Notes: generated by a model from the letters alone, not told the origin. Counted from the stretch's first letter, positions 29,047 through 38,070 are shown. The stretch is 64,000 nucleotides of DNA from Thalia democratica (GCA_965202585.1 OZ241829.1:31434001-31498000); one strand, 5' to 3'. Made by a program: numbers and translations.

Positions 29047-29343
29047 CGTCATAATGATCACTGAAGGATTAAATGATGAAAATTAATGTATCATCGTTCA
29101 TTTTTTTACACTGATGGTTAATTAATTTAGCTTCAACACGGATACTTTTATAAAAATATTCTACGTTTAATTAAAAGTTGTTATTTATTTAATCTTCTGT
29201 AAAACCTTTTGTAACAAATATTACTTAACTGTGAAGATAAATTAAATGTGTAAACTCTGTGATTCTGTTTTACTGTTCTTGCTTTTTTAACGTCCTTTAC
29301 TGTGATGAATTTGTACTGTGATTATTTATTTACAATTTTTATT

Positions 29344-29349
29344 AATAAA
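29344..29349 (+). terminator. Likely CFAP47 polyadenylation signal
   Basis: AATAAA ~300 nt after the stop codon, followed by T/GT-rich sequence. Confidence 0.5.
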
Positions 29350-29634
29350 CACAATGTGCTTTTTTTATCTAGTTGTAGTTCCAACAAAAGCGTTAACAGT
29401 AGTTGTTATTTTCATTTAAAAAGTTTTTTTTTTAGTTTTCATTAAATTAAACTGATTAAAACTTGTATTTTCTATCAAACAATTACTGTAATTACTCTTG
29501 TTTAATTGAATTAATGTTAAGTTTTAATAACAAGTAAGTTAAGTTTTCCTATACAATTCTATAGCAAAAATAACCTCAAGTTTAAAAGTTTTTGAAGTTA
29601 AAACAAAATCGCTACTGTTATCTAAATTTAATTA

Positions 29635-30387
29635 CAGTATACTACCGCTTAGGTACGCACTTTTTTTGGTACGCACCCCGCCTTAAGTACGCACTTAAGT
29701 TTTTCCAGATTATCATATGTTTTCAGGTAGAATGGCCAACTTGCTGAGTGAGCCGGAGACTTTCGCAACTTTTAAACTAGGGTGAGCAATCCTGAGTATT
29801 CTAAAGGGCCTGAGATTGTGACAGTCCTGTTATTGAATGTTAATAAACTAAATACTTTTGTAGTGGTTGCAGAAAAGTGAAAAGAATAATGATATCTGAG
29901 CTGTAATGCTATAAAATAAATAAATCTAGATTACAAAGTTAAAAAAACCTACAAAACAACATAGTTAAATCATAATTAAACTTAAATGTACACACATTGA
30001 TGTTTGGTAAACACAATGTAGTTTGGTCTTTCCCTCTAACAAAACAAAATATGGAAAATATGGCTTGATATTCTTTTTTATATCATTGACTGACATTGTC
30101 TTTCTATATTAAATGTATGTATTAATTATGTAGAAACTTTTTATAGAAAAAATAAATCATTTTAAAATCTATTAAAAAATTGTGCAGATTAGAATTATGT
30201 ATTAAATTATATTTAAAATAAAAAGACTTGTTTATTTAGCTAAATTATTTGGTGGCTAGTTGTAAGAAAGAAAACAAACAACCAAATTTCATTTTATACT
30301 AAGTCGTCAAAAAAAGTACGCACTACCCGTGCTAAGTACGCACTTTTTGGTCGGGTTCAATTTGCGTACTTAAGCGGTAGTCTACTG
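29635..30387. mobile_element. Tc1/mariner-type MITE (753 bp)
   Basis: 25-bp TIRs (CAGTATACTACCGCTTAGGTACGCA; right end reads CAGTAGACTACCGCTTAAGTACGCA on the other strand), TA on both flanks, repeated subterminal GTACGCAC motifs. Absent at the homologous site in the right arm (~37525). Confidence 0.9.
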
Positions 30388-34000: not shown

Positions 34001-36148
34001 CCAACTTTTGAGCACTTCATTTGCCTTTAAAAGAAAAGATTCGGAAGAATTCAAAATTCTTTCTACAGTTCTGGAAAAATACTCACTTGAAAATTTATCT
34101 ATTCTCGAACTATATTTCAACGAAAAATTTTTCATCGAAAAACACACAAGTGCTGATTTTGACGATGTGAAAAGGTTTAAAGAGGTTCTTTTAAAAAAAG
34201 TATTTCCGGGTTATCCCAAAACTAACAAACGCAGTAATATTTCAGAAAGCTACTGCAGAGGTAAGTTAAATGAAGAAGGTTCGTCTGCTGAAGGTAATTT
34301 GACGTCATATTTCAACGGTTTCCTAATCAAAGTCGATGATAAATGGAAAATAAGAAAGGTCGAAGATAATGAAATTATTTACCAAGAGGTCGACGGACAC
34401 AACGTTGTGGACATGGTGGAGCTTTTGTACGCCTTCCGTTCAAACGGCCGAGAGGACCCTGGCAACTTTAAATCGGTTGATATTCACGCGGAACAATATA
34501 AAATAGGCAAGTTGCTTGCGTTGATCAAAACTAAATACCAGCTGGAAGGAGTCACGAAAGAAGGCGGAAGAGCCATGTTGGACTTTGAAAAGGAGTTTTA
34601 CGACAAGCACGACCTCGGATCAGATCTGGTCCAGAAGGTCACCGACCGGAAGTACGTGTTTGACGAGTTTCAGCACGGCGGAGACGAACTGTATTTCGGA
34701 GCTGACGGAGAAAAGCGTGAGGTTTACAAGCGTTTTGGGAACGCTTCGTTTGCATGGGTTTTCGATAGGCACCTCGGAGATTTTCTTGGCATCGGGTTGT
34801 TTTATAACCAACTGCGAGATCAATTTGATGCAAAAGACATGATCAAAGAGTTGATCGAAGGTTTAAAAGAAAGAAGATTGTACTCAAACGCTGAAAAGGA
34901 GCAAGTTGAAGGAAACGAAGAAACAGCAGCTGTGGAAAGAGCAACTGAGAAAAATGCTGATATTGAACAATCTGTTTCAATGACGGGTAATTTTCTATAT
35001 TGATTCTAAATTGTTTTAAACTTAATGTAGACAACTCGTCTAACATTATAAATAGTAACTTATTGCATAATGCTAAACTCTAAGGTACTTTCAAGTAAAT
35101 TATTTTAATTTCCTTAAGTTAAAGCAGAAAAGTATCATTTAACTTTTTTTATGTTTTGTGTAAAACTTTGTAAAAAATTGTTCATTTGACCGAAAAAGTA
35201 GGTTTATAACAGCTCATATCTTAAAAAGCAGAATACTCTACTGAAAGTCTAAAACCACACCAAACTGGTAGAGACAAAAATACAAAGCTCAAAATGAACA
35301 ACAAACAAATCGAAAGAACTGAAATATTACCGAATAAATTTTCTAATAAGAAAGTAAGTTGTGTTTATTGACATTAGAAATTCCCTTTTATATGACTAAA
35401 CAGTTTTATTAAAAAGCTTGAACACACAACAAGAAAAAAAAACTTAAATTCTGTATTAAACTTTGCTTCCTGGTGATTACAATAAACAAAATATTTCATT
35501 GTAAAGTCAATCCAACCTATTATAAACTAAAGTTTTTTAATTAATTTCTGTACAGCTACCTTGTAATGCACACCTGAAAAGAGCAATGAAAGTAAATAAA
35601 GAAAGTTACAAGTATTGGAAGCCATTTTGTAATCCGAATGGTTCATATAAAACTACTGAAAAAATTGTGAGTTGTGTAAGAAATGCTATTAACCTAGTTA
35701 CTACAAACTGCTTACTTTATATAAATAATTTAGAAACACGCAACTTTATTTTTACACGCATATTTATATTATGAGAATTCTGTACTTTTAGTAACTTGCA
35801 CTTTTTGATAATGTTTTAGTTGGATAAAACAGTTTAATTATTTAAACATATTATTTAAAAAAAAAGTCAAAGAAATTCATTGTTTGTTAATAATACAATA
35901 ATAAAGTTAGTAATGGTATAAAGCAAAAATAAAATATTTATATTAGTTTGTTTAAAATGTTATATTAAAGTGAAGTTATAGTTGTTATTTATTCTTAAGA
36001 TTTTTTTTTGTATTTTAATAGCAAATGAAAATCTATAATATAAGAATATAAGAATATATATTTACAGTGTAGAAAAAGAAGATGTTGGTGTGTCGACAAT
36101 AAAGGAATGTTCATGAAACAAATATTCAAAACTTCTGAAACTTGTTAA
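33963..36148 (+). CDS. Unannotated secreted protein (445 aa): signal peptide, unrecognised ~320-aa domain, C-terminal thyroglobulin type-1 (thyropin-like) domain
   Basis: Exons 33963-34986 (G|gtaatt), 35232-35353 (cag|, |gtaagt), 35556-35666 (cag|, |gtgagt), 36068-36148 (cag|, TAA). Phases 1/0/0 are consistent and the frame is open. N-terminus MKTLSLITLVLFCQLLSTSFA is signal-peptide-like. C-terminus LPCNAHLKRAMKVNKESYKYWKPFCNPNGSYKTTEKICRKRRCWCVDNKGMFMKQIFKTSETC has six Cys, PxCxxxGxY and the diagnostic CWCVD. AATAAA at 36361. Confidence 0.85.
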
Positions 36149-36800
36149 AATTAACAACCACATCTATTCTTTTTTCATTCTAATTCTATTAATTTTAAGA
36201 TAATTTAAACATTTTTGACTCGAAGTAAATTTATTTAGTATTTGTCAGCTAAGCAACTGCTTACAAACATCGTATTTGTTTTACTCTGTGCTGAGAATAG
36301 AATTTTTTTTTGTTCAATATAATTTAGAAATAATTAAAACTTATGCGTTAAGTTAAATAGAATAAACCATTCGTTTAAGCATTTTTCATTATTAACTAAT
36401 AAAATGTTTGTTTATTTAGAATGTTGTTACCTTTGTAAAGCTACAATTTCGTTTCACAAGTATAAAACACTTTTGTGTGTTGTAAACCTTATACGTGCTC
36501 GCTTAGTTTGTTTATTAAAATAAATATAAGGTAACATAAAAATAAATTGACAAGTTAGAATTTGAAATAAAAATTAAACTATAATCATATATTTTTTTTT
36601 GTAATTTAAGAAAATGTTTATATGAAAGGGTTATGACACAATCCTATGTAATTTACCTATACATGTTAAATAAAATTAAACTCAATAAAACAATTATAAA
36701 ACTGTTGCATTTTCAGTGGCAAAAGTTTAAAGTATTCAGGTACTTAAACTTTTCTTGAAGTTACTCAAGATTGTTTAAAGTAAGAAAATTATAAACATCT

Positions 36801-38070
36801 CAATGTAAACAAACTTGAATACTTGTATTACATTTTCAAGACAAGTGAAATTGAAAAAAAAAAGCAATTAACACGTTTAATTTCTATTGTAGTAGTTTCA
36901 AAATGTTTATTTATACAAACTGTGTCAAAGTTAAACCAGCTCTTTAGTCTTTATTTCAATAGACAGATATTATTCTGGTTTTATAAAAAAAAGTAGCAAC
37001 TGTGAAAAAAAATTATTTCAAGTACAGTTACAAGTAAGCTTTATGTAAAGAGTTGTGCGTACAACAAATTTTGATAATTAGTTTTAAAGTGTTCACCTGC
37101 CAATGTTTTTAACACCAGCACCTTATATGCTCGCACTTTTTACCTTGGTTTAACTCGATAATATAAGACAGTTGAAGAAACTGTAATTTTAACAAGCTTC
37201 ATTTTTCCTTTAGTACATATACATGTTAGGCAATGGAATATTGGCAAGATAATAACCGAATATACACTTGTGGCAGCATTTAATATTTAAAATCAAGAAA
37301 AAGACTTATATTTAAAATGTTCTTTTTTTAAATAAAATCACTTTCAGTTTTTCAGCACTTCAAAAGTACCAACTTAATATTTTTACAAGACTTTCGAAAA
37401 AGGTAGCTTAAGGTAACAAATAGGGAATCAGTAAGTTTTCAAATACAAGCTGTCTGACAATATTCGAACATACTAATTTGTAATTTAACCGAAAAAAGTT
37501 CTTAAAAGGGTGATTTAAATCAATAGCTATATTTAGTTATCAGTAGCGGTTTTGTTTTTACTTCAAAAATATTTAAACTTGAAGCTATTTTTGCTATAAA
37601 GTTCTATAGGAAAACCTAACTTACTTGTTATTAAAAATTAACTTTTATTCGGGTGTTAAACAAGAGTGGTTATTAAAGTAATTGTTTAATAGAAAAAGCA
37701 AGTTTTAAGCAGTTTAATTTGGTGTAAATTAAAAAAAATAAATAATATTAAAGCTTTTGTTGCAACTACAACTAGATAGAAAAAAAAGCACATTGTGTTT
37801 ATTAATAAAAACTGTAAATAAATAATCACAGTAAAAATTCATCACAGTAAAGCACGCTGAAAAAGCAAGAACAATAAAATAGAGGCACAGAGTTTACACA
37901 TTTAATATATCTTCACAGTTAAGTAATATTTGCTACAAAATCTTTTACAGAAGCTTAAATAAGTAACAACTTTTAATTAAACGTACAACACTTTTATAAA
38001 AGTATCCGTGTTGAAGCTAACTTAATTTATCATAACGATGATATATTAACTTTCATCATTTAATCCTTCA
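36801..38070. repeat. Right arm (1.27 kb, uninterrupted) of the inverted duplication; carries an antisense copy of the CFAP47 3'UTR
   Basis: Continuous reverse-complement match to the left arm once the two TEs are removed. Identity is roughly 85-90% by eye (estimate). Confidence 0.95.

What the first reader, a model, noticed from the sequence alone, without database searches (positions are those of the whole stretch)
29062..38070. A whole orphan gene enclosed in a 9-kb palindrome built from the neighbour's 3'UTR
Arms of 1.27 kb (29062-32699 minus TEs; 36801-38070) flank a 4.1-kb loop that holds exactly one complete gene with its upstream array and poly(A) signal. The outer left boundary is 15 nt after the CFAP47 stop codon. 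There is no TSD at the outer ends, so this is not an obvious TIR transposon. Inference: the gene arrived by an insertion or template switch that duplicated the target in inverted form. Arm-to-arm recombination could flip the cassette without loss, giving an invertible or polymorphic locus. Visible arm divergence and two later TE insertions suggest it is old.
Basis: partly seen in the sequence, partly recalled or inferred. Interest (0 to 1): 0.7.

Follow-up and report, generated by a model that had tools for sequence, protein, structure and literature searches.

The report
Decayed palindrome around a secreted-protein gene
The 9-kb inverted repeat is real, but the gene inside belongs to a large family and the structure looks like the worn-down remnant of an ordinary local inverted duplication, with no sign that it still flips.

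Summary
Two 1.27-kb arms (29062-29630 + 31988-32699, and 36801-38070) differ by about 9-10% in substitutions. They enclose 4.1 kb holding one gene, and the left arm starts 15 nt after the CFAP47 stop codon. There is no target-site duplication. Two dispersed repeats split the left arm. The arms occur nowhere else in the 802-Mb genome except on contig C312, a divergent second haplotype with the same structure and the same loop orientation.

- The gene is not an orphan. It is a 4-exon, 446-aa secreted protein with a thyroglobulin type-1 domain, at least 20 paralogues here and relatives in marine metagenome and metatranscriptome contigs.
- The inner 390 bp of each arm is the gene family's own 3' flank. 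Only the outer ~880 bp is sequence next to CFAP47.
- Conserved family modules show the gene first lay tail-to-tail with CFAP47.
- A module at the left end of the loop (P) keeps the orientation of the flanks, not of the gene.

Best model: a fold-back inverted duplication around P made two gene copies, then a deletion beside the centre removed one. Two haplotypes, the arm site patterns and identical runs of at most 81 bp give no support for flipping today. This is a new instance of a known kind of rearrangement. The scan has separately noted other palindrome-like duplications elsewhere in this genome.

The parts
28801..29046 (+). Last coding exon of CFAP47, with stop TGA at 29044-29046
   Evidence: phmmer against PDB 9ijj_4A, residues 3109-3182 of 3184, E 2.6e-4. 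Sequence read.
29062..29630 (.). Left arm, outer part (segment X). Sequence next to CFAP47, with no detectable family homology.
   Evidence: Pairs with 37528-38070. The family 3'-flank profile finds nothing here.
29629..30389 (.). MITE-like dispersed repeat of ~760 bp with ~28-bp terminal inverted repeats. Present in this haplotype only.
   Evidence: Many copies at 87-94% identity and 11228 first-look candidates. Absent from C312. A copy lies upstream of paralogue C8a.
30392..31987 (.). Older dispersed repeat of ~1.6 kb inserted in the left arm. Present in both haplotypes and absent from the right arm.
   Evidence: Copies at 75-83% identity on many chromosomes and 9872 first-look candidates. 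C312 carries it at 91% identity.
31988..32699 (.). Left arm, inner part. Positions 31988-32317 continue segment X; 32318-32699 are the inverted copy of the family's distal 3' flank (D).
   Evidence: Pairs with 36801-37510. The D profile hits 32706-32497 and 32446-32318 on the minus strand, E 6.7e-15 and 2.3e-8.
32700..32992 (-). Segment P, a conserved upstream module of the family. It is kept in the orientation of the flanks, opposite to the gene. Proposed single-copy spacer of the original palindrome.
   Evidence: blastn minus-strand matches score C8a 84, C6 64 and C8c 58 bits, against a maximum of 58 in 100 shuffles. An nhmmer profile gives one hit, 32991->32853 on the minus strand, E 7.8e-12.
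33347..33962 (+). Proximal upstream region of the gene, in gene orientation, including a short tandem array (33542-33813)
   Evidence: The ATG-proximal profile of the paralogues hits 33347-33558 on the plus strand, E 8.5e-9. Tandem copies appear.
33963..36148 (+). Family gene with 4 exons (33963-34986, 35229-35353, 35556-35666, 36068-36148). It encodes 446 aa with a signal peptide and a C-terminal thyroglobulin type-1 domain. Retention of intron 1 gives the 346-aa ORF ending at 35003.
   Evidence: tblastn of P0002 and blastn of metatranscriptome contig L033. The GT/AG model gives an open frame. Pfam PF00086 on P0002, E 5.9e-7.
36007..36800 (+). Last exon plus proximal 3' flank. This part is shared with the paralogues and is not duplicated at this locus.
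   Evidence: One alignment to C8a and C8b runs from ~36000 across the 36800/36801 boundary to ~36995. Profile E 1.1e-93.
36801..38070 (.). Right arm. Positions 36801-37190 are the family's distal 3' flank, continuous with the gene; 37191-38070 are an inverted copy of the CFAP47-adjacent segment X.
38071..39200 (+). Segment U, a 1.1-kb module with ~130-bp internal tandem repeats. In the C8 and C6 paralogues it lies 1.5-2.8 kb upstream of the gene. Here it lies downstream and in the opposite relative orientation.
   Evidence: Six C8 loci at 68-69% identity. C6 at 63% over 486 bp, E 6e-28.

Best explanation
This is the decayed remnant of a local inverted duplication of a family gene, not an insertion that copied its target.

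Step 0 (inferred from conserved flanks). A copy of the family unit lay next to CFAP47 in tail-to-tail orientation. Read along the window's plus strand the order was: CFAP47 stop, X (~880 bp), 3' flank D inverted, gene on the minus strand, proximal upstream region, P, distal upstream region, U.

Step 1 (inferred). A break or stalled fork just to the right of P was repaired by fold-back or template switching onto the opposite strand. About 5 kb was copied backwards (proximal upstream region, gene, D, X) until 15 nt short of the CFAP47 stop, and the new end was then joined to U. The ~0.6-kb distal upstream region was lost. The result was a palindrome with 5-kb arms, two head-to-head gene copies and P as a spacer of at most 0.3 kb.

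Step 2 (inferred). A 3.8-kb deletion beside the centre removed the original minus-strand gene copy. This is the kind of loss that palindromes with short spacers typically suffer. It left the outer 1.27 kb as arms and made P plus the surviving plus-strand gene into a 4.1-kb 'loop'.

Steps 3-4 (shown). A 1.6-kb repeat inserted into the left arm before the haplotypes split. A 0.76-kb MITE-like element inserted afterwards, in one haplotype only.

Net effect: the gene changed from convergent to co-directional with CFAP47, and its upstream module U now lies 3' of it. At about 10% divergence the arms are poor substrates for homologous exchange, so the locus is most likely fixed in this orientation.
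For: 1. The arms are unique to this locus and present in both haplotypes.
2. The paralogues' 3' flank aligns continuously across the loop/right-arm boundary and 390 bp into the arm. The same 390 bp lies inverted at the inner end of the left arm.
3. U lies upstream of the gene, in the opposite relative orientation, at six C8 loci and at the C6 locus. These are two independent lineages in a 99/97-supported clade with the window gene. The left-arm D part, P and U are all collinear (+/+) with the C8a locus, while the gene and the right-arm D part are inverted (+/-).
4. P is inverted relative to the gene but keeps its usual ~1-1.3 kb distance from the ATG. This is what a spacer predicts and what a simple inversion does not. 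The proximal upstream region is in gene orientation. The distal upstream region is not found anywhere in 29000-39500.
5. Another pair from the same family, on C9, sits today in a two-copy palindrome of about 35 kb with a 281-bp spacer. This shows that the proposed intermediate occurs in this genome.
6. Published precedent: fold-back inverted duplications always carry a single-copy spacer (PMC3907307). Palindromes lose the spacer plus inner arm, including one gene copy (PMC8327919, which also cites Akgun 1997).
7. Timing: arm-to-arm K2P is 0.084-0.100 against 0.058-0.066 between haplotypes, and 32 of 39 informative sites are arm-specific.
Against: - No trace of the deleted gene copy remains, and the fold-back junction (somewhere in 32993-33346) cannot be pinned down or checked for inverted microhomology. 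Steps 1 and 2 are therefore reconstructed, not observed.
- Polarity rests on paralogues, not on an orthologous locus in a sister species, which these tools cannot reach.
- The six C8 loci are recent duplicates of each other and count as one observation. The C6 support is weaker (63% identity).
- The homology of P is short (~140-290 bp at 62-65% identity in AT-rich DNA), although it passes both a shuffle null and a composition-corrected profile search.
- X could be a further, unrecognisably diverged part of the family flank.
- It is a coincidence that the deletion ends within about 9 bp of the detectable edge of P. A centre-initiated deletion would explain it, but this is not proven.
Confidence: 0.58

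Rival explanations
1. A single complex replicative event (FoSTeS/MMBIR-type, three template switches) produced the present order directly. Synthesis ran through X and distal D, jumped to P, then switched to the opposite strand and copied the upstream region, gene, D and X backwards, and finally jumped to U. A two-gene palindrome never existed.
For: It gives exactly the same end product, with the same orientations of the left arm, P, gene, right arm and U. It needs no separate deletion whose end happens to fall at P. No remnant of a second gene copy is seen.
Against: It needs three precisely placed switches in one event. A two-copy palindrome stage is seen for the same family on C9, and centre-adjacent deletions are a documented fate of palindromes (PMC8327919). 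The junctions are too diverged to look for microhomology.
Confidence: 0.2
2. A simple two-break micro-inversion of the whole 4.1-kb loop, with one staggered break that duplicated 1.27 kb of breakpoint sequence (the model of Ranz et al. 2007). Alternatively, an earlier inverted copy of the arm followed by one arm-to-arm recombination flip.
For: The gene is inverted relative to U and to the left-arm 3' flank. One-sided inverted duplications of up to ~1.9 kb at ~88% identity are typical of Drosophila inversion breakpoints (PMC1885836).
Against: Everything between the arms should then be inverted together. P is not: it keeps the flank orientation. The distal upstream region that should lie between the left arm and P is missing. 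An extra re-inversion of P alone would be needed.
Confidence: 0.12
3. The gene arrived between CFAP47 and SLC25A15 by an insertion or template switch that copied the target (the CFAP47 3'UTR) in inverted form. The locus is now an invertible cassette.
For: The left arm starts 15 nt after the CFAP47 stop, and the outer ~880 bp of the arms has no family homology. There is no TSD.
Against: The inner 390 bp of the arms is cargo sequence (family 3' flank), not target. Family modules U and P lie outside or at the edge of the cassette in the opposite orientation. Two haplotypes share one orientation, and the arms show no exchange signature.
Confidence: 0.05
4. A large DNA transposon or foldback-type element with 1.27-kb terminal inverted repeats that carries the gene as cargo.
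For: Long terminal inverted repeats around a single gene.
Against: The arms are found at no other locus in 802 Mb. There is no TSD. No transposase-like ORF lies in the loop. The paralogues on C8 and C6 have no flanking inverted repeats.
Confidence: 0.02
5. An assembly artefact, such as a mis-joined haplotig or a chimeric fold-back read.
For: Palindromes are a known failure mode of long-read assembly.
Against: The arms differ by ~10% and by a 2.4-kb insertion. The same structure was assembled independently on C312. Public-run contigs bridge the 36800/36801 and 38070/38071 junctions.
Confidence: 0.01

Closest known systems
Fold-back inverted duplications with a single-copy spacer (Hermetz et al. 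2014, PMC3907307; also yeast and tumour fold-back inversions)
   Same: Inverted copies of ancestrally unique sequence. A short segment between them keeps its original orientation and copy number (P, at most 0.3 kb). Sequence distal to the spacer is lost (the distal upstream region).
   Different: This one is kilobase scale and interstitial, fixed in a wild genome, rather than megabase scale with a terminal deletion. One arm has since lost 3.8 kb, so the junction microhomology that defines the human cases cannot be checked.
Inversions flanked by inverted duplications of breakpoint sequence (staggered-break model, Ranz et al. 2007, PMC1885836)
   Same: A gene is reoriented relative to its neighbours and is flanked by inverted copies of non-repetitive sequence taken from one breakpoint. 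Arm size (1.27 kb) and identity (~88-91%) fall within the reported range.
   Different: The inverted tract here is only ~4 kb. Part of the interval (P) is not inverted, which that model does not predict.
Gene-bearing palindromes with unstable centres (primate X and Y palindromes, Jackson et al. 2021, PMC8327919)
   Same: A lineage-specific gene family sits in palindromes. Deletions that start at the spacer and extend into the inner arm remove one gene copy. The C9 pair in this genome shows near-identity (99.9%) next to the centre.
   Different: The arms at this locus show almost no arm-to-arm gene conversion since the haplotypes split (3 haplotype-specific sites against 32 arm-specific). They are 10% diverged, whereas the sex-chromosome palindromes are over 99% identical. 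The surviving gene is single-copy and lies in the 'loop'.
Recurrently toggling inversions between inverted segmental duplications (NAHR)
   Same: The geometry: unique sequence with a gene between inverted repeats.
   Different: No second orientation was found, the arms are short and diverged, and no crossed site patterns were seen.

Membership tests
Fold-back inverted duplication (palindrome with spacer) | Two inverted copies of locally unique, non-repetitive sequence | tested here: met
   The arms pair over 1.27 kb. In the genome they are found only here and on the haplotig.
Fold-back inverted duplication (palindrome with spacer) | A single-copy spacer between the copies that keeps the original, non-inverted orientation | tested here: met
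   P (32709-32992) has the orientation of the flanks and is opposite to the gene. The proximal upstream region to its right has gene orientation.
Fold-back inverted duplication (palindrome with spacer) | Loss of the sequence distal to the spacer at the break | tested here: inconclusive
   The paralogues' distal upstream region (~0.6 kb between P and U) gives no hit in 29000-39500. Its absence could also reflect divergence.
Fold-back inverted duplication (palindrome with spacer) | Short inverted microhomology at the junction of spacer and inverted copy | not testable with these tools
   The junction lies somewhere in 32993-33346. The partner arm is deleted and the sequence is ~30% diverged from the paralogues.
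Inversion with breakpoint duplication (staggered breaks) | The gene is inverted relative to the ancestral order of its flanks | tested here: met
   The gene aligns +/- to C8a, while the left-arm flank and U align +/+. The same holds for other C8 loci and C6.
Inversion with breakpoint duplication (staggered breaks) | All sequence between the two duplicated copies is inverted | tested here: not met
   P, at the left end of the loop, is not inverted.
TIR DNA transposon or foldback element | Target-site duplication at the outer ends | tested here: not met
   The outer flanks share no direct repeat.
TIR DNA transposon or foldback element | Other copies of the termini elsewhere in the genome | tested here: not met
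   Whole-genome search with the arm.
NAHR-invertible segment | Both orientations present among haplotypes | tested here: not met
   The window and C312 are collinear through the whole structure. Only two haplotypes were available, and the short contigs show no alternative junction.
NAHR-invertible segment | Arms carry signs of exchange (crossed or haplotype-specific site patterns) and long identical tracts | tested here: not met
   32 arm-specific, 3 haplotype-specific and 4 crossed sites. The longest identical run on one chromosome is 73-81 bp.
Orphan (taxonomically restricted single-copy) gene | No paralogues or homologues | tested here: not met
   36 matches in its own genome. Seven database homologues, one 448 aa long with a thyroglobulin-1 domain.

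The most novel reading that the evidence does not exclude
The decayed palindrome may still matter functionally. One possibility is a low-frequency inversion polymorphism that toggles the secreted thyroglobulin-domain gene between convergent and co-directional arrangement with CFAP47. The other is that read-through from CFAP47 across both arms makes a long hairpin RNA that feeds small-RNA silencing of the gene. Under either, inverted duplication followed by one-sided decay would be a recurrent way for this family (see the C9 palindrome) to acquire new regulation.
Probability: 0.06. Interest if true: 0.6.

Novelty: new member of a known kind. Interest (0 to 1): 0.3.

Why it matters
The locus is a clean natural example in which the history of a small palindrome can be read from the conserved flanking modules of a gene family. 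It shows a gene being turned round next to its neighbour by inverted duplication followed by one-sided loss. It also shows that an apparent 'loop' can be a former arm. It does not point to a new mechanism or a new mobile element. The value is mainly methodological: using paralogue flanks to set polarity and to tell a fold-back duplication from a plain inversion. It also helps annotate a fast-evolving secreted protein family in a highly heterozygous marine animal genome.

Tried and rejected
- **CFAP47 3'UTR from transcript fragments.** A protein search with the 81-aa CFAP47 last exon found no candidates. Whether the outer arm is transcribed as 3'UTR stays open.
- **Public reads.** Only short Logan contigs were available and no run is recorded as RNA. 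They bridge two junctions but cannot span an arm, so orientation in other individuals was not tested. Most 'joints' have sides of only 21-26 nt. I treat them, and the 35674->36053 joint with 72-77-nt sides, as split alignments of divergent haplotype or paralogue contigs.
- **Short inverted repeats around P.** A search for a leftover of the deleted arm found only matches at chance level.
- **Junction microhomology.** Nothing is interpretable at the two novel junctions at this level of divergence.
- **Pfam on the 346-aa ORF.** No family was found. The only domain is in the spliced tail.
- **Simple inversion model.** This was my working model up. I dropped it once the orientation of P was established.
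- **Synteny in related species.** Not testable, because the genome collections on offer hold no relatives of this animal.

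
Full report
**1. Observation**

The inverted repeat exists as described.
- The repeat finder and blastn pair 29062-29630 with 38070-37528, and 31988-32699 with 37510-36801.
- A four-sequence alignment gives 90.7% substitution identity and K2P 0.100 between the arms in the window.
- Both the inner and the outer boundaries are sharp.
- The exon ending in TGA at 29044-29046 matches the last 74 residues of CFAP47 (PDB 9ijj_4A, E 2.6e-4), so the left arm starts 15 nt after that stop.
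- No direct repeat flanks the outer ends.
- Mitochondrial-carrier exons (PF00153) start at about 47990 on the plus strand, roughly 10 kb beyond the right arm.

**2. Not an artefact and not a repeat family**

The window is G000:C5:31434001-31498000 in an 802-Mb genome.
- A whole-genome search with the right arm finds only the two local arms, three pieces on the unplaced contig C312, and short matches beside paralogues on C8.
- C312 (64.6 kb) is collinear in reverse complement with window 1-49371 at 91-96% identity. It carries the same palindrome with the loop in the same orientation.
- Contigs from the best-holding public sample come in pairs at the same place: one identical to the window and one 7-9% different, at comparable depth (records 4/5, 7/8, 12/13). 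I therefore read C312 as the second haplotype of a very heterozygous animal.
- Contigs bridge 36800/36801 (X1, X2) and 38070/38071 (X3, a different organism label and study).

**3. The insertions in the left arm**

- Positions 29629-30389 are a ~760-bp MITE-like element with ~28-bp terminal inverted repeats. It has many copies at 87-94% identity and is absent from C312.
- Positions 30392-31987 are an older dispersed repeat, with copies at 75-83% identity. It is present in both haplotypes and absent from the right arm.

**4. The gene**

- The 346-aa ORF (33963-35003) has an obvious signal peptide and no Pfam match.
- Database homologues include a 448-aa protein whose extra tail maps to three further exons and carries a thyroglobulin type-1 repeat.
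- A metatranscriptome contig confirms the splicing.
- A GT/AG model (33963-34986, 35229-35353, 35556-35666, 36068-36148) gives an open 446-aa frame.
- The genome holds 36 matches to the protein, in clusters on C8, C1 and C9 and singly on C6, C2, C5 and C10. The gene is not an orphan.
- In a maximum-likelihood tree the window gene, the C6 gene and the recently multiplied C8 genes form a 99/97-supported clade whose internal order is unresolved.

**5. What the arms are made of**

- The 3' flank of the C8 paralogues aligns to the window in one piece from about 36000, across the loop/arm boundary, to about 36995, and again at 37024-37190.
- A profile of the C8a and C8b flanks gives E 1e-93 and 2e-13 for those two pieces, and hits the mirror positions 32706-32497 and 32446-32318 in the left arm.
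- The profile finds nothing in the remaining ~880 bp of either arm, although it extends further itself.
- Each arm is therefore a chimera: 390 bp of the family's own distal 3' flank (D) plus ~880 bp (X) that abuts the CFAP47 stop.

**6. Polarity from the family's flanking modules**

- The 1.1 kb just outside the right arm (U, 38071-39200) occurs in this genome almost only beside family genes on C8. Smaller matches lie in a separate C8 array at 52.35 Mb and at sites on C2, C6 and C9.
- At six C8 loci U lies 2.1-2.8 kb upstream of the start codon, in the orientation opposite to the one it has here relative to the gene.
- The C6 paralogue shows the same arrangement at 63% identity over 486 bp.
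- Against the C8a locus, the left-arm D part, a short segment P and U all align +/+. The gene and the right-arm D part align +/-.
- So the flanks record a gene that once lay on the minus strand, tail-to-tail with CFAP47.

**7. Why it is not a plain inversion**

- P (about 32709-32992, the left end of the loop) matches the paralogues' upstream region only on the strand opposite to the gene. Scores are 84, 64 and 58 bits against a maximum of 58 in 100 dinucleotide shuffles.
- A composition-corrected nhmmer profile gives a single hit at 32991->32853 on the minus strand, E 7.8e-12.
- P's distance to the ATG (~1.0-1.25 kb) resembles that in the C8 copies (1.1-1.5 kb).
- The ATG-proximal upstream profile hits 33347-33558 on the plus strand, E 8.5e-9. 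The distal upstream region that separates P from U in the paralogues is not found anywhere in 29000-39500.
- A two-break inversion of the loop would have inverted P and kept the distal region. A fold-back or template-switch duplication with P as spacer predicts exactly what is seen.

**8. Model**

- The ancestral order was X, D', gene', upstream', P, distal upstream, U.
- An inverted copy of (X D' gene' upstream') was laid down to the right of P, replacing the distal upstream region. This gave a palindrome with 5-kb arms and a spacer of at most 0.3 kb.
- A 3.8-kb deletion from the centre into the left arm then removed the original gene copy.
- These two steps are inferred. A single three-switch replicative event would give the same product, and I rate that at about 0.2.
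- Published work supports both steps as ordinary. Fold-back inverted duplications always carry a single-copy spacer (PMC3907307). Palindrome centres are unstable, with deletions of spacer plus inner arm that remove one gene copy (PMC8327919).
- Inversion-associated inverted duplications of breakpoint sequence (PMC1885836) are the nearest alternative.
- Within this genome, two family genes on C9 sit in a ~35-kb palindrome with a 281-bp spacer. Identity is 99.9% next to the centre, 90% at the genes and 76-83% further out. This is a living example of the proposed intermediate.

**9. Age and stability**

- Among the four arms (two per haplotype), 32 informative sites group by arm, 3 by haplotype and 4 crosswise.
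- K2P is 0.084-0.100 between arms and 0.058-0.066 between haplotypes.
- The duplication therefore predates the haplotype split, and there has been little arm-to-arm conversion or exchange since.
- Stretches with no arm-specific sites (alignment columns 386-660 and 835-1117, the latter with one exception) hint at older conversion.
- The longest identical run between arms on one chromosome is 73-81 bp, and the left arm is interrupted by 1.6-2.4 kb of repeats.
- I find no support for present-day flipping. Two haplotypes cannot exclude a rare allele.

**10. Verdict**

It is partly wrong: the gene is not an orphan, the arms are not simply the neighbour's UTR, the gene did not arrive by the event that made the arms, and there is no evidence of invertibility. 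This is a new instance of a known class of rearrangement, of modest interest.

Earlier scan notes on the gene's hidden exons (s1-317361) and on the upstream array (s1-317415) agree with what I found. Notes on other palindrome-like duplications in this genome (s1-287234, s1-274422) fit the view that such events are common here, but I did not test them.

Noticed in passing
G000:C9:4115255-4149981 (loci L043-L046): About 35-kb palindrome holding two family genes in convergent orientation (4121041-4121901 on plus, 4137338-4138201 on minus). The spacer is only 281 bp. Identity falls from 99.9% next to the centre to 90%, 83% and 76% outward. This suggests gene conversion focused on the centre, or possibly a partly collapsed assembly. 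Contig C535 seems to carry the same pair.
   Followed up: partly
C312:19500-20700 (haplotig) versus window 33963-35003: The second-haplotype allele of exon 1 has two single-base insertions (opposite window ~34185 and ~34595) that break the reading frame. This is either a pseudogenised allele or homopolymer errors in an unpolished haplotig.
   Followed up: partly
window 38071-39200; C8:30.47-31.6 Mb; C8:52.35 Mb: Module U (1.1 kb, with internal ~130-bp tandem repeats) is conserved at 63-69% identity, as well as the coding sequence. It sits at a fixed distance upstream of family genes. Its repeat part also forms a separate array near C8:52.35 Mb. It may be a family-specific regulatory module.
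   Followed up: partly
window 29629-30389: A young, very abundant ~760-bp MITE-like element (over 10^4 first-look candidates, copies up to 94% identical) that is polymorphic between the two haplotypes. Another copy sits between P and U at the C8a paralogue.
   Followed up: partly
window 15713-16645 (minus strand): A 310-aa single-exon ORF with a strong CCDC113/CCDC96 coiled-coil domain (PF13870, E 7.5e-25). It lies antisense just upstream of, or nested within, the CFAP47 exon series. That would place a second ciliary gene beside CFAP47.
   Followed up: no
window 39790-39816 versus C312:8906-14567: The haplotig carries a ~5.7-kb insertion relative to the window. Overall haplotype divergence is 4-9% in non-coding sequence, so heterozygosity is unusually high.
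   Followed up: no
window 35674-36053: Contigs in three runs join 35674 to 36053 with 72-77-nt sides, close to the intron 3 boundaries (35667-36067). I read this as a split alignment of a divergent haplotype, but a processed copy or RNA-derived contigs were not excluded.
   Followed up: no
window 17169-18155 (minus strand): A 327-aa ORF with no Pfam match, lying within the CFAP47 region.
   Followed up: no
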